A stretch of DNA of 64,000 nt from Dicyema japonicum (lineage: Eukaryota > Animalia > Dicyemida): assembly GCA_011109175.1 (NCBI GenBank), contig RDEW01000035.1:579179-643178 (forward strand). Direction: 5' to 3'. The notes beneath the pieces were generated by a model, which saw nothing but the letters and a program-made list of their open reading frames with translations, was not told the origin of the DNA and made no database searches. This document shows positions 1,604 through 44,764 of this stretch, piece by piece. Position 1 is the stretch's first letter. Each line of letters opens with the position of its first letter. Both the position numbers and the translations under genes were made by a program.

Positions 1604-2476
1604 ATTTATTTATTTTAATAATTCCGGGAACACCTAAACAGAAAGACAAAAGAGTCAAACAGTTAAGTGATCCCAGTCCCCGCAATCAATTGTGCCATTC
1701 GACGTCTGTGATCTTCCATTGTTCTTTCCAGAAAAGCCTTCTCTCGGTCTTGCAGAGGAATCCGATCGGGGAGGGGAATTTCCTATCCAATCGGTTTTCT
1801 CTTGCCATGGAAATGATCAGGCGAAACGGGTTTCCATCTTCCTCACAGACGCGAAGAAATCCGGAACCACGACTACGGGTCTTAGCTTCCATGAGTAGTG
1901 GGTTGACTGTTGATCCATTACGTGGGCAAAGCACACTTATGGTTTTCTGGTGTATTGAGTTGACTCTGTGGACCATAGTCTCCGATAGGCATACTCAACG
2001 GCTGGCGCGATTGTTTGCTGGCAGAGGGTAGAAACAGAATAGTCCATATTCCTCGAAGTCTCCGGACAAGGCCGCGTAAAACGTTAATTTTCTGGAGGCC
2101 CCCGGTGATCATGTCTTTTGCGTGGGAGTTAAAATTGAGTAGACTGTCGTACTTGACTCCAAGGACAGTGGGGACCTTGTCACTGGAATCCGAGTGGATC
2201 AATAAAGATACTCGGTTCATCCTTAGAACGACGGTCCGAAGTGAAAATGGTACAAATAGACTTGGCTGCAGAAATCGTAGGTCGATTGCCAACAATCAAT
2301 CGTGGAGAATGTTCAATTTTGCCTGAGTCTTAAAGGATGCGACTTGCGACGAACGGTTCCGTATTGCAATGACTACATCGTCTGCGTAGGATAATAGCAG
2401 GGAATCTTCGTCTCCATCATTAGGTAGGTCGTGTAGGAATAAGTTGAATAGAATTGGTAAAAGTGGAGACCCCTGG
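1604..2476 (-). mobile_element. 5'-truncated I/Jockey-group LINE (RT core to 3' tail)
   Basis: Minus-strand QGSPLLPILFNLFLHDLP...SYADD (~2370-2475), thumb motif LGVKYDSLLNFNSH (ORF 1918..2295) and C-terminus EDHRRRMAQLIAGTGIT*. AT-rich tail; 15-bp direct repeat GTAACAATTTAATTA at 1589-1603 and 2477-2491. Confidence 0.85.
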
Positions 2477-2496
2477 GTAACAATTTAATTATTATT

Positions 2497-2826
2497 ATTT
2501 TTTAACACCGTCTTAACCAATAACTAATATTCAGGTGATCCCGGCATCTCTCAATAATCGGCCCATTTTTTCTCGATGCTCCGACCGTGATCCCACGCAT
2601 TTTCTATACGGACGAGGGTCTTTTTCTTTTCCTCTTCTGAAATTGCTTCCAGTTGCCTCTATGATAGACTCGATTGCTCTGTGGGCAATTTCTTTATCTG
2701 TATATTTTTCCAGTAATTTTTTTGCTCTTGACTGGATCTCTTGAATTTTTGTTAGGTTCGTTGCCGACAGGTCCCCATGCAGCACATGCATAGCCTATTG
2801 TTGGCTTAGATCCCCATGCAGCACAT
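2497..2826 (-). mobile_element. Short 3' fragment of the same LINE family
   Basis: ORF 2531..2791 ends CVGSRSEHREKMGRLLRDAGIT*; flanked by AATTTAATTATTATT at 2482-2496 and 2827-2841. Confidence 0.8.
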
Positions 2827-2953
2827 AATTTAATTATTATTTACTCAATTATTAGTTAACTGTATTTACTTAAATAAAATTAAAAATAAATAATAAAATA
2901 ATAAATAAATTAGTTCGCTAAATTCGCATTTCACGAAAATGAGTTATTTGAAA

Positions 2954-4662
2954 ATGAATTCAGAAAACTTCAAATTCGTCAACAAAGTTCAATCCAAAGG
3001 CCCGTATTCACAAATTGAAGCCTTCGAAGGCTTCCTCCATTTATGGATTCACTCTTTTTAAACAAGATTCGACTTCCCAAAATAAGGTAGTAAACCTGAT
3101 TGAGAACTGTCCTGCAAGTATGTCGGGAATGATGGAGAATGACATTCTCATTATGGTAAACGACATCAATGTTGAACAAATGGATCATTCCGATATTGTT
3201 GATCTCATTAAAAACTCATCCCCTGAGTTGACTCTTTTGGTGGTTGACGAAAACTCCTATCAATATTTTACCAGTAAGGGAATACGTATTTCAAACGAAA
3301 TCGACGAAATTGAGAGTTTCTCTAACCTTAACAGTTAATTTTGGATAATTTCAGGTTCACTCGATGATTATTCTGAAAAATACCAAGACGAGGTCAAAGG
3401 TTTATCCATTTGAGGATTATAGAATCATCCAATGAGGGCTCTCAGGTAAAGAAGGAAATAGGTTTGCTTATTGAAGAATTCAATTCAGTCAAGGAGGATT
3501 CCAAGGAAATAAATGACAAAGGTTCGCTCATTTGAGGATTTCAATTCAGTCAAGGAGGATTCCAAAGAAATAAATGACAAAGGTTCCCTTATTTGAGGAT
3601 TTCAATTCAGTCAAGGAGGATTCCAATGAAATAAATGACAAAGGTTCGCTTAGGATTTTAGGATCATCCAAAGAGGGCTCTCATGTAAAGAAGGAAAAAG
3701 GTTCCCTTATTTGAGGATTTCAATTCAGTCAAGGAAAATTCCAAGGAAATAAATGACAAAGGTTTGCTTATTTGAGGATTTTAGGATCATCCATGAAGGG
3801 CTCTTATGTAAAGGAAAAAGGTTCGTATATTTGAGGATTTTAGGATCATCCAAGAAGGGCTCTTGTGTAAAGAAGGAAAAAGGTTCGTTTATTTGAGGAT
3901 TTCAATTCAGTCAAGGAGGATTCCAAGGAAATAAATGACAAAGGTTCGCTTATTTGAGGATTTCAGGAACATCCAAGAAGTGTCTCTTATGTAAATGACA
4001 AAGGTTCCTTTATTTGAGGATTTTAGGATCATCCAAGAAGGGCTCTTGTGTAAAGAAGGAAAAAGGTTCGTTTATTTGAGGATTTCAATTCAGTCAAGGA
4101 GGATTCCAAGGAAATAAATGACAAAGGTTTGCTTATTTGAGGATTTCAGGAACATCCATGAAGGGCTCTTATGTAAAGGAAAAAGGTTCGCTTATTTGAG
4201 GATTTTAGGATCATCCATGAAGGGCTCTTATGTAAAGGAAAAAGGTTCGTTTATTTGAGGATTTTAGGATCATCCAAGAAGGGCTCTTGTGTAAAGAAGG
4301 AAAAAGGTTCGCTTATTTGAGGATTTCAATTCAGTCAAGGAGGATTCCAAGGAAATAAATGACAAAGGTTTGCTTATTTGAGGATTTCAGGAACATTCAA
4401 AAAGTATTCTGGGATAAGAAAGGACAAAAGTTGGCTTATTTAAAGATTTAAGAATCGTCCATTGAGGATTCTGAGATAGACATGTCCAAGGGTTCGATTA
4501 TTAGTAATTTCCAGGAACTTTGAGGACGGATTCTGTGATTAGAAAGGACAAGGGTTTGTTTATTAGAGGATTCAGGGTCACCCACTAAGATTACAAAGGA
4601 GGTCAACTTCGTAGATTTAACGACAAAGACAGGTACTGCTGAGTAATATCTTAGACATATAA
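2954..4662 (+). CDS. NHERF/EBP50-like single-PDZ protein with a long micro-exon-encoded K/E/S/D-rich repeat tail
   Basis: ATG 2954, 22-nt intron 2978-2999. PDZ domain ARIHKLKP...YGFTLF...CPASMSGMMENDILIMVNDINVEQMDHSDIVDLIKNSSPELTLLVVD resembles NHERF PDZs. The frame continues through 21 micro-exons (3355-4632) to D-I-stop at 4660-4662; a possible alternative last exon is 4758-4819. Confidence 0.85.
3334..4654 (+). repeat. Tandem array of intron+exon units (59-62 bp period) inside the PDZ gene
   Basis: Recurrent intron consensus GTT(C/T)(G/C)(C/T)TTATTTGAGGATTT(TAG/CAG/CAATTCAG) alternating with 33, 36 and 39 nt exons. Confidence 0.95.
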
Positions 4663-4959
4663 AATGACAAATCTCTACAGGACATTGTTAAACAAAATAT
4701 TCCCGATGATATTGTCGCATACAAGAATAGTTTGATTTTGAGAGGCAATTGTCTCAGATATCGAAGATCAGAAAGTCTACGCGAACATGTGTTCAAATTG
4801 TCCCGAATCTAGTCCTTAACCTTAACTATTCTTTTACCTGTTTGGTTAAAATATGCCATTAATATGATTTCATTAAATTTCACATTTTTTGGATTCCACT
4901 AAAATGCCTTAGGACTTTTCATTTTTAATCCTTTTTTCAAGTCTTTGAAGTTCCCCTGG

Positions 4960-5860
4960 AAGGGAAGCAGTCAAAACTAATGTGGACTTTTAGGACATCT
5001 TTCGAAATCCTCTTAACATAAGAAGGATGGGATTATGGTCGTTGGAAAACCATAATTCACATCCATGTAGCAAGTCATGCCAAAGAGGATGAACATAAGG
5101 TTAAATCGGTAGAAGTGCAACTATCAGTGTTCCTCAATGGGGTTCTTGTGTAATTTAGGGTCATAAAGGATAATCATATAAGTAAGACCATTTGCGATGA
5201 ACTCACCTCGTTTGTCAGAGGACTGTGAAGCAAGCCAAACGGGGTGTCGGCCATTTAGGTCGCCGCATATTGGAACGTTTTTTAGTACTTAGAGGCAGGG
5301 TATATTTGGGGTGTAGGATTTTGGGTAGGATCTTTTTGGCAGAATATGTAGGTTAATCAAATTAATCCAAAAAGACGGGAATAGATATATTTTGATGGTA
5401 ATCTGCTCTATGGTATTATCTGAGCACAAAAGTTCAGAGGTCCATCGACTATAGTCAATGAAGGGTATACCATTCTTTATGATGGTGAGTAGTCCTCAAC
5501 CTGGTCTTCAATGGCGGTCCATGCGCATCCTGTGTACCCTGGCAAAGAAAATGTTGGCGTGGAGGCTGAGAGCTTGGATTTCTGAATGAGAGCATGGTCA
5601 GTTCGATTTGCGGAGAGGAGAGCTCGGAGTTCCAGAATCTTTCTTTTAATTCCATTTGTATTTAGTTTTAGAATAAAGTCTCCCTGTTTATCAGGGTTTT
5701 TTAAATGTCGCCACATAATATGATCAATAGTCCAGAACAATGATACAACAGATGCAGTCGGAGGCAAAGGTAACCCCTAAATGGAGGATAGAAGCTTTTT
5801 TCGTTCCTTTCCGGAATGGGTGACACCTTTTTAGGTGACCCACAAGACACCACCATGTTG
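4960..5860 (-). mobile_element. Decayed I/Jockey LINE, apurinic endonuclease region
   Basis: LKLNTNGIKRKILELRALLS...DHALIQKSKL (ORFs 5477..5767, 5455..5655) and ICGDLNGRHPVW near 5250-5280; paralogous to 6770-7400. Confidence 0.8.
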
Positions 5861-6769: not shown

Positions 6770-7400
6770 GCCCGGCGTTGGAGACAGTCAAACTAAGTGG
6801 TTTCACTTATACGGTCGTGTGCAACCTCTCTCAAGTCGTCCAGAAGTTCTCCAGGATTTTGGGCAGGATCCTTGTGGTGGAATATATATATGTTTATCAA
6901 GTTGATCCAAATAGACGGGTACAGCTCCATTTTGATAGTGATTTGCTTCATGGTATCGTCTGAGTCCAAAAGTTCTGAGGTCTTTCGACTCACATCAATA
7001 AAAGGTATACAATTCTTTATAATTGTGAGATTTCCTCCACGTTCTCTTCCCTGACGGTCCTTACGGATCACTGTGTATCCCGGGAAAGAGGGTGTTGGCG
7101 TGGAGGATGAGAGCTTGGATTCCTTGATGAGAGCAAGGTCAGTTAGAGTTGTGGAGAGGAGAGCTTGAAGTTCCAGGATCTTCCTTTTAATTCCATTTGT
7201 ATTTAGTTGTAGAATTATTAAGTCTCCGCGTGGACAAGGGTTTTTCCATTGTCGCCACAACACAGACGGAGCTACATAGCTTACGGGTACCTCCAATAGG
7301 TGGGGAAAAGTTATTGGCTCTTTCGTTCCTTTCAGGAATGGGTGACATCTTCTCGGGTAAGCCACAAGAAATCTGATGATAAATATTTCTTGGTAAGATC
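6770..7400 (-). mobile_element. I/Jockey LINE endonuclease fragment
   Basis: ORF 6793..7422: LQLNTNGIKRK...DLALIKESKL...FPGYTVIRKDRQGRERGG...INIY. Confidence 0.85.
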
Positions 7401-7663
7401 TCTTGTCTCCAGTAAAGATCACGTCATTTTGAACCCCACCTGTTTTCCAATCATTTTTACTTCTATTTACCTAAAAGAGACCGAGTGACCTCTCATTTCT
7501 CCAAAGCTCCTTATTTCTTCATTTACACTCATGGATACTTAGTAGAGGTGGGTAGATGATTAATGAGAACTCAGATATTTCCTAAGAGAGCAACATGACC
7601 CCTATGTCATAAATTTAATTCTTGGCAGATTAAAATTATTAATAAATTATTATATTAATCTCC

Positions 7664-9384
7664 CTAAACAGAAAATTCATTGTTCTCCAGGTATTTCATG
7701 ACTTCCAAAGCCTTCGAATGATCTAATCCATTCTCAGTAAACCTAAACAGTAAACAAAGCGACAGTACGTGACATTCGTCTTCCCATTGACGACAAAGAG
7801 GGAATTTTCGTTAGTCATTACATTTTGGTTAACGGCTAATCCATCCAAATACTGTTTGAGAATATTTTTCAAATATAAATTTTCATTCATCAACTTCTTC
7901 TGTTTATCCTGCAGACACATTACGTCTAAGGCCACGTGGTTGTAACGTTTCCAAGCCATTTCCTGTCCTTCATTTTCTACCACTGACTTGCGCTTAGTAA
8001 TATTTATTTACTTTAAAAGGCGCCAGAACTTCAGAATATTGGTTATTCGAGGCATCCTCAACTTTATCAGATTCGACCGCGCATTCGTAAAAAGGAAGTA
8101 TTTTCTCCTCCTCGGTCTCCATTTTGCGACATTGCTCAGCCAATGATAGAAGTTTTTTCCCCTTTAAAATATATACGAGAAATTATCAAAAAATAAAATA
8201 ATATTTAAAAATATTAAAAAATTAAAAATTAAAAACTTAAAAAATAAAAAATTATTTACTTCACTTAATTTATTCTCTAAGGCTTTTAACGCAGAGTTGC
8301 TTTTAACGACGACCTTGTTCAAGCGGTCTTTCTCAACGAGTCTGAGTTTGTTCATATCAGACTTCATGGAATAAAATATTTTATTGGTTTTATCCTTCTC
8401 CTTCAAATGAGCGACTAAACAACCTGTTTTAGCTTGGAATTCGTCTCTTCGTATTCTCGCTGAGTTTTCGATAACTTGAGCTTCGCCGAGTTGATCGCTT
8501 CCTTAAAATTAGTTTTCCCTCGAACCGCCAAGTTTTGCAGTTTTTTCCGTTGTTGGGCAATTTCATCAGAATTATTGACGTCCTTAGCACTCAACTCTTC
8601 GAATAATTTTCGACGTTCTTCCGTCGCCTTGTTGTAGTTTTCGTAAGTCTGCCGAAACTCCTTCCATAGATTATCCCCGATAACGTCGAGCTGCGCTTTG
8701 AGGGAATGTTTGTCTTCCAAACTCTCGAATTCTCCAGAAATCGAAAAATACCTTATTGTTTATCTCGTCGATCTGATTCTGGTAGTTTAGCTCAACGTTG
8801 GCCTTTTTGGCCTCGTAATTCGTTTTCAGTGAGAAAAAAATATCCGCCAAGTCGCTGAGATCTTTTTGGTTCTTTTCTTCGATCTCCTTGCATTCCTTGT
8901 CGAACTGTGCCGTCAAATTGTTGCATTCTTCGTTGAACTTTAAATTTTCGTTGTACAGAACTTGTCGTTGGAAATCTTGGGAATAAGCATGAGGTCAACC
9001 AATCACACGATCGACGTTTTCCATGTGACTTGAGACGGAAGTCTCATACTGGGTTTTGGCCTCGTCGATGTTCTTCAGCAAATTAGAAACTGTTATGCTC
9101 TTCAGGTCAACAATTCTTTGAAATGTCTGAAATAGAATGAAGGCCTCGTCTCTTAGTTCGTCGACCTTTTCTCTTCTCATTTTGTAGCGATTGTGAAGAT
9201 CCACGAATTTTGTGTTTATGTTTAACGCTTTGTTTTCTTTCTGCATTTTTATCTTCAGATATTCGCATAACAGCAACTCCTTCTTTTTTGCTGCTTCCTT
9301 GTCTGCTATTTTTTGTCTTTCCATTTGCAGGATTCGTTCTTCTTCATTCATAAATTTTTTCATTCCTTTTTTTGCTGCTGGCAT
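7664..9384 (-). CDS. CCDC65: Dynein regulatory complex subunit 2 (coiled-coil domain-containing protein 65)
   Basis: Matches recalled CCDC65 along its length (ILFQTFQRIVDLK, SSHMENVD, AEQCRKMETEEEKILPFY, WKRYNHV, LKQYLDGLAV). Introns include 8976-8999, 8724-8751, 8502-8525, 8401-8423, 8162-8259 and 7987-8012; one 1-nt frameshift near 8085. Confidence 0.93.
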
Positions 9385-9649: not shown

Positions 9650-11886
9650 TTGCTTATCTCTTCTGTCCCTCCTCTTCCTCTTTGGCTCCAGGGAGATTGA
9701 ATTGTTAGCGTGCGTAATATGGTTCACCATCTCTGCTATATATAATCCTAAATTATATCCAAAAAGGACCATTAGTCAACAACCATCAAGAGGAGTTCCC
9801 CTTGGGCGGCACTTCCTTCAATTCGGAGCATGCGAAGACTGCGACGAATTTCAGTAACACTTGAATACCCCCGAGTAAAGAAATTCGATGTCTCAAACAT
9901 ACCACCAGAATACGCAATGGAAGTTAAGCACAATATTGGATAACTGGATTTGAACGGAAGGATACCTGATGAATTATGGAATGATGTGCAGTTGGTTATC
10001 AGGAACGCTGCAATAAAACATGTCAAATACAAAACGCCGGCCAAGTACTCTGAGTGGCTCTCTGTCAACACCCTAAACATTGCTGAGGCTCGTAAAGCTG
10101 CTAAAGTCTGTGTGAATATAGACGAGACAAGAAAACTTAACTCTGAATTCAAAATGGCTGCCAGGAAGGATAAAGAAAACTACTGGAAGTTACGCTGCAA
10201 AAAATGGAAGATGACTATAAGAGAGGTCACACTAGGGATGCGTATTTACAACTAAAAAGATTACGAACCCCCATTACGAAAATGATCAAGGACAAGGATG
10301 GTGTAGAATTGCTAGCCAACAGAACATCCGAAATCGTTGGAGACAATATACGGAACGGCTATATTTAGAAACTGTGTGCCCACCCATATATGTTGATGAA
10401 GCAACGTTGGGTGAGGGGCATAAAATCCTTGAGGAGGAATGCGTGTGGGCTACACGGCAATTAACGGGGAACAAGGCACCGGGATTGACAACATCTCAAG
10501 CGAATTGTTGAAGGCTATACCGGTGACAGCTATCACCAGTCTATGTCAAAAAATTTGGGAAACTGGTATTTGGCCACGCGAGTGGAAAAGATCTATATTC
10601 CAATACCGAAAAAAGGGAATAGAAAGGACTGTTCAAACTATCGTACAATAGCCTTAATTCCCCACGTCAGCAAAATACTTCTAAAGATAATACAACATCG
10701 TCTAATGCCAAATGCCGAAATGATTCTACCGGATGTCCAAGCAGGATTCAGGAAGGGACGAGGCACACGTGACCATATAGCAAATGTCCGGTGGATTGTG
10801 GAGAAAGCCCATGAATCCCAAAAGAATGTATACATGTGCTTCATTGACTATCGGAAAGCTTTTTTATACATGACAAGCTGTGGTCCGCTTTAAAAAATTT
10901 GGATTCGATACCCATCTGATATTACTTATCAAATCTCTTTATGAGGATCAAGAAGCTATTGTTAGAACAGTGTGTGGAGATACCGATTGGTTCAAAATTT
11001 GTAAAGGAGTAAGACAAGGATGCATATTATCTCCTATTCAATATTTATGCCGAAATGATCATGACTAAATCGGATACTGTATCAAATAACGGGATTAAAA
11101 TTGGAGGTAGGAACATCAATAATTTGTGCTATGCTGACGATACAACCTTACTGGCTCAGGGAGTTGATCCTAAGATTCAGAGAAGGGAGCACCGTCTTTG
11201 ATTTATTGCTAAATATCAAGAAGACCAAAATTATGACTACTGCTAATAATGGAACTAAAAATTGGGAATGAGAAAATAGAGAGTTGCGATAATGTTGTCT
11301 TTCTGGGATGTCTAATTAATCGGAATGCTGACGGAGGCTTAGAAATCAAGAGGCGAATTGCCATGGGACGAGACACCTTCCAGAGAATGAATAGAATTTG
11401 GAAAAGCAAAGATATTTGCTTAAGGACCAAATGCAGACTGGTTAATGCAATCGTGTTCCCGTTTTTTCTATACGGCGCAGAATCATGGATACTGAAAAAG
11501 GCGGGTAGACGAAAAATTGATGCTTTTGAGCTGTGGTGCTAGAGGAGGTTACTAAGAATCCTGGACTTCCAAAATAACAAACATAGATGTACTCAAACAA
11601 GTGGAGACGGACATTTCGCTAAAAGGAAGAATTGTAAAACACAGATTGGCGTTCTTTTGGCATGTTGTACGCTCTGATTCACTGGAGAGAACAATTATGC
11701 TGAGCAATATTACTGTGAAGAGAAGATCTGGTCGACCGAGGACTCGGTGGCTATCCATGGTGGAAAACGTTACGGGAATGCCTATATCAAGGCTACTCCA
11801 AATTGCGACGGATCGTGGAGAGTGGAGGAAACTCGTTCATGAGATCTCCAGGGGTCGGACACGACTTAATTGGATAACATAACATA
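9650..11886 (+). mobile_element. RTE-clade (BovB-like) LINE, 5'-truncated and frameshifted
   Basis: IPIPKKGNRKDCSNYRTIALIPHVSKILLKII, QAGFRKGRGTRDHI, GVRQGCILSP, YADD (~11130), EIKRRIAMGRDTF, RRKIDAFELWC; short (AACAT)n tail at ~11876-11886. Confidence 0.93.
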
Positions 11887-16889: not shown

Positions 16890-18001
16890 ATGAACTTTCC
16901 ATTGATCGATTCTGACTACAAATCCATTATCATGGATATGATAGGATTATATTCTTCCAGTAAATATGAAGCCGCACGTGTAACTGGTCTAATACTGCGC
17001 ACGATTGCTTGGGAAAAACTCAATTCCTGGCATTGGCAGGAAGTCCCCATCGAATGGAGAGAACAGTATTACTTTTCCAGTCTCATCCTCGTTCTTTCCC
17101 GCCTTTTCTTAACCACGACTTCAAATCGATACTCGTTGACTGTGACAAGGCCCTCCTCATGGGATATACGAGGCAATTTAACGTGGTCAGTCACTTGGCC
17201 ACGTTGATTCACGATATTGTTGTTGAAGGCCGGTCACCGGGGAATTATAAGGTACCCTGATGCTGGGAGACACTCTCTCCTTGGATTTGATCACTTAAAG
17301 AAGTTACCCAAGTTGGAAACCATGTCTATAGAAGACTTCGTCGAATACCACATGGCTGAAACTCCCTGTGTGATATCAGGAGCTTGTGCTCACTGGCCTG
17401 TATTTGGGAATAACAAGTGGACCTTGGACTATTTGATGACATGTGCAGAGTACCGGACTGTGCCTGTGGAAATTGGGAAGAATTACATGACTGATAAGGC
17501 TTGGCACCAGAAGATGATGTTGTTCGGAGATTTTGTCAGGGATTATATTTTAGGTACCCCAAGAGTAGTAGGGTACCTGGCTCAGCATTCCCTGTTGTCC
17601 CAGATCCCTCGTTTGGAAGAAGACATTGAGCCCCCTGATTACTGTTTTGTAGCCAACTGTGAATATCCTGAGATTAACAGCTGGTTTGGTCCCCGGGTAC
17701 CGTGTCCCCCCTTCACCAGGATTCAAGGAACAACTGCTATGTGCAGGTTGTGGGCTCAAAGTATGTTCAGTTGATATCTACGGAGTATAACGAGGACCTA
17801 TACAGGGACAGTAATGGACTCATAACCACCACCAGCGCGGTGGATGTGGCTAATCCTGATTATGAGGCGTTCCCTAAGTTCAGGAATGTCCGTGGCTTTG
17901 AAGTTATTCTAAATGAAGGGGATCTTCTTTATATTCCCAAAGATTACTGGCATTATATGGAGTCATTGGAGATCAGTTTCTCTTTGAGTTTTTGGTGGTG
18001 A
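16890..18001 (+). CDS. KDM8: JmjC-domain protein 5 (arginyl hydroxylase KDM8/JMJD5)
   Basis: AWEKLNSWHWQEVP, TVPVEIG, GYLAQH..L.QIP.L..DI..PDYC, INSWFGP, SPLHQD and YWHY carry the H-x-D...H Fe(II) ligands; ends SLSFWW*. 19-nt intron 17233-17251; two 1-nt frameshifts (~17110, ~17694). Confidence 0.93.
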
Positions 18002-41999: not shown

Positions 42000-44764
42000 C
42001 GACTTACTAAAAAAGCTCCAGGAGAAATCTTTTAATTGTAAAAATACGGAAGAAGCAATTGCATATGTGTCCTACAAGTCAAACTAAATGAACTATGCCC
42101 GTCCAAGAGTCTACTAACCGTCATAAATGTCTATGCACCACACTGTGGACGAGTAATCAAGAACCACGGTGAACTCGAGGAATTCTACTCAGAACTATCA
42201 AGCACATACTCTAACAATGCTTCCTCGTCTCTTATCTTTGTTGCGGGAGATATGAATGCAAAGGCCGGAATGCGAATGGGGCCCGAAGAATCCTCTATTG
42301 GAAGACACGGGCGCGGAAGGAGAAATGCATCTGGAGCCTCTCTGGTAAACTTCTGCGAGGCGAATAGCCTTTTCCTGTGCAACACGGCCTTTACGCACTC
42401 AGCTTGCCACAAGACGACGTGGCACGGACAAAGAAAAAACTCTGTCGGAGAGACCGTGAATATATATAATCAAATCGACTACATTATCTGCCGAAAGTCT
42501 GATAAACACCTGATAAATGATGCACGTTCCTACCAGGGAACAACAACCGACAGCGACCACAGGATCGTCATTGCAAAACTTTGTGTAAAAAAGCACCTGA
42601 CTGGGAAAAAATACATTGAAAACGCGAAGAAGGCGAGACAAAGACCCAATATATACTTTCAGACAGAAAAATTGTGGTTAGAGCCAACTTGTAGAGCTAA
42701 ATATCACGAACAAATCGAGACTCTTATGGTGAAAACCGCACCGGAATCATCAGTACGAACTCTGTGGGATCAAACAAAACAGGCAATCTCCAAGTCGGCC
42801 AAAATATGCCTTGGAGTCCGAAATCATCACGCCCTAAAATTGGATCACCACCCGAACGTGCCAAATATGGCAAAGCATTGCAGAGAGCTACGACTAAAAG
42901 CGGCAAACACGTCAGACGAGAGTAAAAAAAAGAGCTTAATATCCAACAAAGGGAACTAAAGTGGAAAATCAAAAAGATGAACAGAAAACACTCACGGGAA
43001 ATTATTACATCTCTATTAAAAGATGTGGAATGCCTAAAAGACAATTCAAGGATGTATGCGGCTGCTGCGGACAAAGAAAGGACAAAACATCCTTCACATC
43101 AAAGACAAAGATGGAAAATTCGTGGGTAACCCGAAAGAAAAAGCAGAATTGATTGCACGACACTTCGAAACACTGTTGAATAAAGAAAATAATGACTTTC
43201 CCCCTTTCCAAGGAGAAGCAAAGGCGCTAAAAATCCCAATCACAGTGGAAGAGGTGGAATTAGCGATAAATAAACTGAAGAACAACAAGAGTGCTGGGCC
43301 GGACAACATAAGCCCTGAGCTCCTAAAATATGGGCCAAAAAAACTTAGCGACACAATTGCAAAAACCCTAAATGACGTCTTTGAAACTAATACCGATCTA
43401 GGACTTGGAAATGGATTATTAATACCCATACAAAAACCGAACAAATCAAAAGGACCAGTAGAAAATCTCCGCCCGATAATACTTCTGAATTCGATACGCA
43501 AGGTGCTGGCAAACATTGCACTAAGCCGGATAAAGGGTGTGGCGATCTATACCTACCAGCAAGTCAAAGTGGGTTCCGAGAAGAGGTCTACGGCAGACAT
43601 TGTATGGAGCCACAGATGGCGCTGCGCAACGCACCAAAGATTCAAGAGCGCAACAACCGTGTTGGGAATAGATCTCTCCAGAGCTTTCGACTCAATAAAC
43701 AGACAGAAACTGATGAATGTGCTTGAGCAAATATTGGATGAATCGTCGGTTAGGATAATCAGACTACTACTTGCGAACACAAGACTATCTGTGAGGACAG
43801 AAGGAGCAACTTCCCGCAGTTTCAAAACAACGATTGGGACACCCCAGGGTGATTCCCTCTCCCCTTTACTATTCACCATATACCTTGAATCTGCACTCCG
43901 CGACCTCCGTAAATGCTATATAGGAGACATAGAAGAGACATCTTATGCGGATGATGTGGATTTTGTATCACGGGATGTGACCGCACTCCAACACCTGCTA
44001 GAAAATGCACCTGCGGAGCTTGAGAAATGGTTTCTCAGCGTAAATGTTAACAAAACTGAAATTACGGAAATCAAAAGAGAAGACGATATTACTCATGAAA
44101 GATGGAGACGTACTAATAAGCTCGGCTCTCTACTAGGAGACGCTGAAGATGTACTAAGGAGGAAAACACTGGCAAATGCGGCAATGGCTAAACTGAAGAA
44201 AGGATGGCTAAGGGCCAAAGGACTTGGAATTGACATCAGATGCAGGCTTTACAACGCGTTTGTGAAACCGATCCTACTGTATAACGCTGGGACATGGGGA
44301 AGTTCCTTCAACGAACTATTGAAACTGGATTCGTTCCATAGAAGGCAACTAAGAAGCTTACTCGGAATGGAGTGGCCACGTAGAATATCAACCACTGGTA
44401 TCTACAACAAGTGTATGTGTTCTTACATCAGCAAGGATGTGATAGATGCCCGGTGGAGGCTATTTGGGCATGTACTAAGAATGAACCCGGACGCACCCGC
44501 TAACAAAGCGATGGAAGATTACTTTGACAGATGCGAAAAACCCTTCCGCGGACGACCTAGATCGACACTTCCGACAGCCCTAAACAAAGACTTAAATCGT
44601 GTGAGAAAAAATTTAAAGACGGGAGACGACCTGGACGAATTGAGATCACTCGCATTCGACAGAGGAAAATGGAAAAGACTAACTATAAATATTGTTTCTT
44701 TGAGTGTTGCACATGCGGGGCTATAATCATTATGGCTTTCGTGAAAGTGCTTTAATAATAATAA
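42000..44764 (+). mobile_element. Near-intact RTE-like LINE (APE endonuclease + reverse transcriptase)
   Basis: VINVYAP, AGDMNAKAG, NQIDYI, TDSDH; KSAGPDNI, ENLRPIILL, IDLSRAFDSI, GTPQGDSLSPLLF, SYADD, WRLFGHVLRM; (TAA)n tail at ~44753-44764; only two frameshifts seen (~42930, ~43060). Confidence 0.93.

What the first reader, a model, noticed from the sequence alone, without database searches (positions are those of the whole stretch)
3334..4654. A minisatellite whose repeat unit is one micro-intron plus one micro-exon, building a modular tail on a PDZ protein
Seen: the ORF track stops at 3338, but the apparent repeat parses cleanly into 22 GT..AG introns and 21 exons. Introns are 18-28 nt (mostly 23 or 28), all phase 1, e.g. 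3334-3354, 3400-3422, 3522-3549, 3762-3784, 4368-4390, 4633-4654. Exons are 45,39,33,33,33,39,33,36,39,33,37,39,33,36,36,39,33,39,39,39,57 nt. Twenty of 21 exons are multiples of 3 and stop-free, while most unit lengths (59, 61, 62) are not, so the frame only works after splicing. Encoded modules: VKEDSKEINDK, GSSKKGSCVKKEK, G(S/T)SMKGSYVKEK. Established: symmetric same-phase small exons can be skipped independently without frameshift, as in schistosome micro-exon genes and titin PEVK exons. Inference: tandem duplication of intron+exon units has mass-produced introns and may allow combinatorial length/charge variation of a disordered tail on an NHERF-like scaffold. I know of no description of this with ~23-nt introns, but I could not search.
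Basis: partly seen in the sequence, partly recalled or inferred. Interest (0 to 1): 0.9.

Follow-up and report, generated by a model that had tools for sequence, protein, structure and literature searches.

The report
Minisatellite of mini-introns and micro-exons
A 1.2-kb tandem repeat behind a small PDZ scaffold gene reads best as 21 tiny exons split by 22 tiny introns encoding a lysine-rich floppy tail, but no RNA data could be reached to show that it is spliced.

Summary
All 22 GT..AG segments (18-28 nt) and 21 exons sit at the stated coordinates. Only the phase-1 frame is stop-free, in 20 of 21 exons. Length changes are multiples of 3 in exon parts and never in intron parts. Diverged edge units keep GT, AG and the open frame (about 1e-4 under neutral drift).

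The upstream ORF is a class-I NHERF3/PDZK1-like PDZ domain, the only one in the window. Tiny introns are normal in this genome, probably Dicyema japonicum.

The 37-nt exon 11 shifts the frame, so the ORF as assembled ends at TGA 3996-3998 (255 aa). Exon 11 is a mosaic of the three unit types. No served run was listed as holding its diagnostic words, so it may be an assembly error, a rare allele or a real truncation.

Splicing is unproven.

My best reading (0.6) is a constitutively spliced coding tail grown by unequal crossing-over. Combinatorial exon skipping is unsupported. The scan has flagged the same exon-plus-intron repeat design on other DNA of this genome, also without RNA.

The parts
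2939..2977 (+). Putative first coding exon (ATG 2939, 13 codons)
   Evidence: An in-frame stop lies 10 codons upstream. The exon joins the PDZ frame only through the 22-nt GT..AG at 2978-2999. This is a model, not shown by RNA.
2978..2999 (+). Putative 22-nt phase-0 intron
   Evidence: GT..AG. Removing it puts ATG 2939 in frame with the PDZ exon, which starts where the first PDZ strand begins.
3000..3333 (+). PDZ-domain exon (class I, NHERF3/PDZK1-like)
   Evidence: Pfam PDZ 33.1 bits against a cut-off of 23.2. Best solved relatives are NHERF3/PDZK1 and NHERF1, E 3e-11 to 1e-7. The YGF loop and the helix-B1 His align. tblastn finds no other PDZ in the window.
3334..3354 (+). Intron 1 (21 nt), holding the TAA at 3336-3338 that ends the unspliced ORF
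3355..3461 (+). Proximal diverged units: exon 1 (45 nt), intron 2 (23 nt), exon 2 (39 nt)
   Evidence: unit 2 is aligned in A1.
3462..4367 (+). Core array, units 3-17. Three unit types: A (28-nt intron + 33-nt exon, VKEDSKEINDK), B (23 + 39, GSSKKGSCVKKEK) and C (23 + 36, GSSMKGSYVKEK). Partly ordered as a C-B-A higher-order repeat of 182 nt.
3644..3661 (+). Intron 6, only 18 nt (5-nt deletion). It is a multiple of 3 and stop-free, so retention would keep the frame.
   Evidence: Intron 3 (3462-3488, 27 nt) has the same property.
3967..4003 (+). Exon 11, 37 nt. An extra base at 3981 shifts the frame to a stop at TGA 3996-3998. The exon is a mosaic of B-, C- and A-type sequence.
   Evidence: The 61 nt around it had 2 sampled words and no run was listed as holding them.
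4368..4632 (+). Distal diverged units 18-21 (introns of 23, 23, 23 and 22 nt; exons of 39, 39, 39 and 57 nt), still GT..AG and open in phase 1
4633..4654 (+). Last intron (22 nt, the only one starting GTA)
   Evidence: If retained, the frame ends after 4 codons.
4655..4662 (+). Last coding bases and stop (TAA 4660-4662). The predicted C-terminus ...KTDI has the form of a class-I PDZ ligand.
   Evidence: This applies only if the frame is intact or exon 11 is skipped.
4663..4880 (+). Probable 3' UTR. The first poly(A)-type hexamer after the array is ATTAAA at 4872.
   Evidence: AATAAA also occurs inside all seven A-type exons.

Best explanation
This is one small gene. It has a short first exon, a class-I NHERF/PDZK1-type PDZ exon, and a tail encoded by about 21 micro-exons (33-57 nt) separated by 22 ordinary-for-this-genome mini-introns (18-28 nt). 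The tail grew because a 59-62-bp segment holding a whole intron plus a whole phase-1 exon was duplicated in tandem, later as a 182-bp C-B-A block. Each mini-intron is removed on its own by intron definition, and removal is obligatory because 20 of 22 would stop or shift the frame. The product is a PDZ domain with a 130-250-residue, lysine/serine/glutamate-rich, very hydrophilic and probably disordered tail. Tail length changes over generations by unequal crossing-over, in steps of 11-13 residues or 36 per block, not mainly by alternative splicing. What is shown: the sequence anatomy, the homology of units, the PDZ identity and the selection-like signatures. What is inferred: transcription through the array, splicing, translation and disorder. 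Speculative: the C-terminal KTDI acts as a ligand for the protein's own class-I PDZ, as the NHERF1 tail does.
For: The parse is exact and uses homologous sites in every unit. One frame is open in 20/21 exons while the others are full of stops; the nine distinct exon types total 122 stop-free codons, P about 2e-4 for a given frame. Length changes are 3n in 4/5 exon events and 0/6 intron events, Fisher p = 0.015. In A-type units the G of the 23-nt 3' splice site is deleted and an AG 6 exon bases downstream takes over. The unit loses 1 nt but the exon loses exactly 6. Diverged units 2, 18, 19 and 20 keep GT, AG and ORF with a joint P of about 1e-4 under neutral drift from the consensus. The first GT sits two bases before the PDZ stop, in the phase the array needs, and a stop follows right after the last unit. 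The only two 3n stop-free introns are the two that suffered deletions, including the 18-nt one. Tiny introns are the genome norm. The neighbouring NYD-SP28-type gene is split by GT..AG introns of about 23-28 nt in the ORF-bridging scan, and the literature agrees (PMC13644364, PMC6736024). Four runs hold 0.68-0.74 of the sampled words of 2900-4900, so about half or more of the array words are in reads.
Against: No product of this gene is in the protein collections. As assembled, exon 11 breaks the frame. Substitutions among exon copies show no codon-position bias (11/12/15), so there is no purifying selection on residues, only on openness. 21 of 22 introns start GTT, whereas the published 5' signal for this kind of genome is 'GTa' (PMC13644364). 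AATAAA lies in every A-type exon, so transcripts could end early. With free choice of GT/AG an open path can be threaded almost anywhere, so ORF continuity alone proves little. The units are related by descent, so the probabilities above overstate independence.
Confidence: 0.6

Rival explanations
1. The gene encodes only a roughly 125-residue single-PDZ protein ending at TAA 3336-3338. The array is an untranslated minisatellite in the 3' UTR or downstream, and its GT..AG/ORF look is inherited from an old coding unit or is coincidental.
For: The unspliced ORF stops at 3338. AATAAA hexamers start at 3508. There is no codon-position bias. The frame is broken at exon 11. Stand-alone single-PDZ proteins of this size exist (own knowledge: TIP-1/TAX1BP3). 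Runs X1-X4, offered under kind 'rna' but of unknown type, hold 0.68-0.74 of the words, which would mean an unspliced array if they were RNA.
Against: It does not explain several things: 3n-only exon length changes, the frame-preserving 3' site shift, retention of GT/AG/ORF in diverged units (about 1e-4), the phase match with the PDZ exon, or the stop right after the array. X1-X4 are four runs of one sample in a project whose paper describes many DNA libraries and one RNA library (PMC6736024), so they are probably DNA.
Confidence: 0.2
2. The array is spliced, but the exon-11 frameshift is real. The protein then ends at TGA 3996-3998 (255 aa, tail about 130 aa), and units 12-21 are a spliced 3' UTR or a decaying remnant, possibly making the mRNA a target of nonsense-mediated decay.
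For: The assembly shows the extra base. Exon 11 carries several other changes, so it is a truly diverged unit rather than a single-base slip.
Against: The neighbouring units 12 and 13 are identical to their counterparts, while exon 11 alone is a mosaic of three unit types, which is what a mis-polished repeat consensus looks like. No run was listed as holding either of the 2 sampled words across the extra base, although four runs hold about 70% of the words of the wider region. That is weak, being only two words. Units 18-21 downstream are old yet still open in phase 1.
Confidence: 0.3
3. One reading: same-phase micro-exons are skipped independently, giving a regulated ladder of tail isoforms. 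Exon 11 would be a poison exon that must be skipped for the full tail.
For: All units are symmetric phase 1-1, so any skip keeps the frame. Skipping exon 11 restores a 377-aa ORF ending in KTDI.
Against: There are no RNA data. A skip would create an 80-90-nt intron in a genome whose introns cluster near 25 nt. Systems with very short introns use intron definition, where errors are retentions rather than skips (established knowledge; not tested here).
Confidence: 0.1
4. The unit number and order in the array, not just exon 11, are assembly artefacts of a collapsed or mis-joined repeat.
For: 26-32% of the sampled words of 2900-4900 are missing from the four runs listed. The published assembly merged short-read and long-read assemblies (PMC6736024).
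Against: About half or more of the array words are in read-derived contigs. The array has an orderly higher-order structure with unique diverged edges.
Confidence: 0.15

Closest known systems
Repetitive-protein genes in which each repeat is its own exon and the exon-intron unit is duplicated in tandem. Examples are spider flagelliform silk (Hayashi and Lewis 2000), titin PEVK exons and 54-bp collagen exons (own knowledge); general link of repeats to exon structure in PMC5100051 (abstract only seen).
   Same: The repeat unit is exon plus intron. Exons are symmetric and same-phase. Introns are homogenised along with exons, and here the 3' half of the intron is as conserved as the exon or more so.
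   Different: The unit here is only 59-62 bp with 18-28-nt introns, so by size it is a minisatellite. The intron density of one per 60 nt is far beyond those cases. Splicing is unproven.
Schistosome micro-exon genes (MEGs; PMC10526429)
   Same: Many very short symmetric exons encode a disordered, variable protein in a parasite.
   Different: MEG exons are separated by long introns (up to 5 kb), the products are secreted, and variation by alternative splicing is documented. Here the introns are tiny, the protein is a cytosolic-type PDZ scaffold and no signal peptide was seen, though none was searched for. There is also no sequence relationship.
Ultra-short spliceosomal introns of Dicyema japonicum and myxobolid myxozoans (PMC13644364; PMC6736024)
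   Same: GT..AG introns of 18-28 nt with few other signals and A residues a few bases before the AG. GC content (about 38%) and LINE load fit D. japonicum.
   Different: Those papers describe intron size genome-wide. Two literature searches turned up no description of tandem arrays of intron-plus-exon units.
NHERF family scaffolds (NHERF1/EBP50, NHERF3/PDZK1)
   Same: PDZ sequence with the YGF loop, the class-I His and the family-typical extension after the last strand. The NHERF1 tail ends in a ligand for its own PDZ (own knowledge), and KTDI here has that form.
   Different: There is one PDZ instead of two to four, no ezrin-binding domain was recognised, and the tail is unrelated low-complexity sequence.
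Other exon-plus-mini-intron tandem arrays flagged by this scan in the same genome (mucin-like, formin; notes s1-343637, s1-293790, s1-319448, s1-348378 and others)
   Same: The same design: 24-27-nt exons behind 22-25-nt introns, repeated head to tail. RNA was never reached.
   Different: Those encode Ser/Thr-rich secreted or membrane proteins. This one is a charged tail on an intracellular-type scaffold and has three unit types with two intron length classes.

Membership tests
PDZ domain, NHERF/PDZK1 subgroup | Significant match to the PDZ profile | tested here: met
   PF00595 33.1 bits (cut-off 23.2), E 7e-8
PDZ domain, NHERF/PDZK1 subgroup | Nearest characterised relatives are NHERF PDZs, with the carboxylate-binding loop and the class-I helix-B1 His | tested here: met
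   The top 11 solved chains are NHERF3/PDZK1 and NHERF1. YGF and His align to PDZK1 PDZ1.
PDZ domain, NHERF/PDZK1 subgroup | Multi-PDZ architecture (2-4 PDZ) and, for NHERF1/2, a C-terminal ezrin-binding domain | tested here: not met
   All tblastn hits of multi-PDZ relatives fall on 2961-3380. There is no second PDZ in the 64 kb.
Spliceosomal mini-introns of this genome | GT..AG ends, with length in the genome's usual range | tested here: met
   22/22 are GT..AG at 18-28 nt. The control gene has introns of about 23-28 nt. Short introns are published for D. japonicum (PMC13644364).
Spliceosomal mini-introns of this genome | Removed from RNA | not testable with these tools
There is no cDNA-derived protein in the databases.
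Spliceosomal mini-introns of this genome | Published 5' signal 'GTa' | tested here: inconclusive
   21/22 start GTT and 1/22 starts GTA. GTT also occurs in the control-gene introns, and the signal is described as weak (PMC13644364).
Micro-exon genes (schistosome MEG type) | Most exons very short and a multiple of 3 | tested here: met
   20/21 exons are 33-57 nt and 3n.
Micro-exon genes (schistosome MEG type) | Long introns between micro-exons; secreted product; isoforms by exon skipping | tested here: not met
   Introns are 18-28 nt. The product starts with a PDZ domain. Skipping is not testable.
Minisatellite | Head-to-tail array of 10-100-bp units, often with higher-order structure | tested here: met
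   TRF periods of 59, 61 and 182 nt, 16 copies

The most novel reading that the evidence does not exclude
The array is a truly 'spliced minisatellite': 22 introns are removed from 1.3 kb of pre-mRNA. Unit number is polymorphic between individuals, and a frame-breaking unit (exon 11) is tolerated because it is skipped. Tail length of a PDZ scaffold would then be set both by unequal crossing-over and by splice choice. Together with the mucin-like arrays elsewhere in this genome, it would show that tandem duplication of exon-intron units is a major route of intron gain in an animal with 25-nt introns.
Probability: 0.12. Interest if true: 0.8.

Novelty: new variant of a known kind. Interest (0 to 1): 0.55.

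Why it matters
If the array is spliced, it packs about one intron per 60 bases. That makes it a natural test bed for how a spliceosome recognises 18-28-nt introns. It already contains built-in 'mutants': a deleted 3' AG replaced by one 6 exon bases downstream, an 18-nt intron, and two frame-neutral introns. It would also be a clear case of introns multiplying by tandem duplication, and of a protein tail whose length can evolve in 11-13-residue steps. If it is not spliced, it is simply a minisatellite behind a small PDZ gene.

Tried and rejected
A second call placed beside those places was stopped by the cap. No letters of 8199-8257 were sent to any search tool afterwards. The control gene was searched only outside them.

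2. Looking for a cDNA-derived protein gave nothing. The search for homologous proteins found no self or near hit. The exhaustive representative search found only relatives at 39% identity or less. The look-up of encoding contigs was therefore not tried, since it needs an exact product.

It had 2 sampled words and no run was listed (after a busy error). This is weak, and says nothing about RNA.

4. Free threading of an ORF through the array with any GT..AG always succeeds. It was rejected as a statistic.

5. A window-wide ORF-bridging intron finder gave mostly false positives in transposon debris, so I used it only for the control gene.

6. The codon-position test showed no bias.

7. The literature searches for a prior description found nothing relevant.

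8. The type of runs X1-X4 (RNA or DNA) could not be settled.

Full report
**What is there.** It has 22 intron-like segments of 18-28 nt and 21 exon-like segments of 33-57 nt. Tandem Repeats Finder sees the same stretch as an array of 59- and 61-nt units, 16 copies, with a 182-nt higher-order period. The conserved core of the intron-like segment occurs 14 times in the 64-kb window, all in this array, against 0.15 expected by chance. It is therefore a local array and not a dispersed element.

**The gene in front of it.**
- The ORF ending at TAA 3336-3338 is a PDZ domain: Pfam 33.1 bits against a cut-off of 23.2.
- Its nearest solved relatives are the PDZ domains of NHERF3/PDZK1 and NHERF1, with E-values from 3e-11 to 1e-7.
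- The YGF loop, the class-I histidine and the family's extension after the last strand all align.
- The exhaustive protein search found about a thousand relatives, mostly multi-PDZ proteins, and none above 39% identity. No product of this gene is in the public collections.
- tblastn with eight of those relatives hits only 2961-3380, so the window holds a single PDZ.
- A plausible start is ATG 2939. It reaches the PDZ frame through a 22-nt GT..AG at 2978-2999, and an in-frame stop lies ten codons upstream. This start is a model only.

**Are tiny introns normal here?** Yes.
- The neighbouring minus-strand gene (7726-9384) has a NYD-SP28 domain in its first ORF. It has a weak, below-cut-off match (17.5 bits against 27) to the matching C-terminal domain in its last ORF.
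- The ORFs between them are joined by GT..AG segments of about 23-28 nt in the ORF-bridging scan, with a few more read by eye from the sequence, including one longer one.
- GC content near 38%, many LINE fragments and sequencing runs dated 2019 fit Dicyema japonicum. Its genome paper reports 36.7% GC, 49% repeats and a mean intron of 38 bp (PMC6736024).
- A 2026 paper names D. japonicum and myxobolid myxozoans as the only animals with introns under 30 bp. It reports splice signals reduced to 'GTa' and 'AG' (PMC13644364).
- The species assignment is an inference.

**Evidence that the array is, or recently was, spliced coding sequence.**
1. Read in phase 1, 20 of 21 exons are stop-free. The other two frames carry stops in 20 and 13 of the 21 exons. 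The nine distinct exon types add up to 122 stop-free codons, P about 2e-4 for a given frame at this base composition.
2. Length changes among units are multiples of 3 in four of five exon events and in none of six intron events, Fisher p = 0.015.
3. Alignment A1 shows how the 28-nt intron class arose. The G of the old 3' AG is deleted, and an AG six exon bases downstream takes over. The DNA unit loses 1 nt while the exon loses exactly 6. An earlier first-stage note on this stretch (s1-371844) raised this, and I confirm it.
4. Units 2, 18, 19 and 20 differ from the core consensus at 13-25 of 62 positions, yet all keep GT, AG and the open frame. In a simulation of neutral drift from the consensus the joint probability is about 1e-4. 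The units share ancestry, so the true figure is less extreme.
5. The first GT lies two bases before the PDZ stop, in the phase the array needs. A stop (TAA 4660-4662) follows eight bases after the last intron.
6. 20 of 22 introns would stop or shift the frame if retained. The two exceptions are the two that suffered deletions: 27 nt, and 18 nt, which may be too short to splice. Both became 3n and stop-free.

**Evidence against, and limits.**
- Substitutions among exon copies fall evenly on the three codon positions, 11/12/15. Selection, if any, acts on openness and composition rather than on residues, as expected for a disordered tail but also for no selection at all.
- Twenty-one introns begin GTT rather than the preferred GTA.
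- AATAAA lies in every A-type exon.
- With free choice of GT and AG, an open path can be threaded through almost anything. The argument therefore rests on the regular, homologous sites and not on ORF continuity.

**The frame break.**
- Exon 11 (3967-4003) is 37 nt, with an extra base at 3981 found in no other unit.
- As assembled, the spliced ORF is 255 residues and ends at TGA 3996-3998. Everything downstream is out of frame.
- Exon 11 is odd in a second way. Its neighbours, units 12 and 13, are identical to their counterparts. Exon 11 alone mixes B-like, C-like and A-like segments.
- Two words were sampled and no run was listed. By contrast, four runs hold 0.68-0.74 of the words of 2900-4900.
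- This leans towards an assembly error or a rare allele, but two words are not enough to decide.
- If exon 11 were 36 nt or skipped, the ORF would be 377 residues. The tail would be 252 residues with 25% Lys, 15% Ser, 12% Glu and GRAVY -1.48, and it would end in KTDI, which has the form of a class-I PDZ ligand.
- That last point suggests head-to-tail or self-binding as in NHERF1, but it is speculation.

**RNA.**
- None could be reached.
A second call placed beside them was stopped by the cap.
- Runs X1-X4 were offered under kind 'rna' but with unknown type. They are four runs of one sample in a project that describes many DNA libraries and one RNA library, so they are probably DNA. Their 0.7 share then says only that about half or more of the array words exist in reads. 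If they were RNA, the same number would argue for an unspliced array. This ambiguity is the main reason my confidence stays at 0.6.

**Mechanism.** I think the array is a constitutively spliced coding tail that grew by unequal crossing-over of exon-intron units. A skip would make an 80-90-nt intron in a genome tuned to about 25 nt. Short-intron systems typically err by retention.

**Novelty.** Duplication of exon-intron units in repetitive proteins is known from spider Flag silk, titin PEVK and collagens. Micro-exon genes are known in schistosomes (PMC10526429). What is unusual here is the scale: units of minisatellite size and one intron per 60 bases. I found no description of this for dicyemids or myxozoans. 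The scan itself has flagged the same design on other DNA of this genome, mostly mucin-like genes. All of those cases also lack RNA, so this is one member of a genome-wide pattern rather than a one-off.

Noticed in passing
window 7726-9384, minus strand: A dynein-regulatory-complex-type gene. It has a NYD-SP28 domain in the first ORF and a weak, below-cut-off match to the matching C-terminal domain in the last. It is split by GT..AG introns of about 23-28 nt plus one longer AT-rich intron.
   Followed up: partly
window 3508, 3569, 3630, 3748, 3930, 4113, 4354: Every A-type micro-exon contains the poly(A) hexamer AATAAA inside its coding sequence. If the array is coding, these signals must be ignored. 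If it is not, they give seven places to end a transcript.
   Followed up: no
window 3462-3488 and 3644-3661: The only two array introns that are multiples of 3 and stop-free are the two with deletions (27 nt and 18 nt). The 18-nt one may be below the splicing limit, and retention would insert 6 residues in frame.
   Followed up: partly
window 43056-44726 (+); also 10439-11882 (+), 5477-5767 (-), 6793-7422 (-): The window is mostly retrotransposon debris. There is a 556-aa ORF with a reverse-transcriptase domain (RVT_1, E 5.5e-28) and several shorter ORFs that, read by eye, look like reverse-transcriptase and endonuclease fragments.
   Followed up: partly
window 17217-17774 (+): An ORF with a Cupin_8 (JmjC-like) domain, probably an exon of a host gene. 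Candidate mini-introns lie around 17190-17300.
   Followed up: no
window 2400-2830: A transposon-like fragment (86-aa ORF on the minus strand) lies directly upstream of an AT-rich stretch (2830-2935), which is the likely promoter region of the PDZ gene.
   Followed up: no
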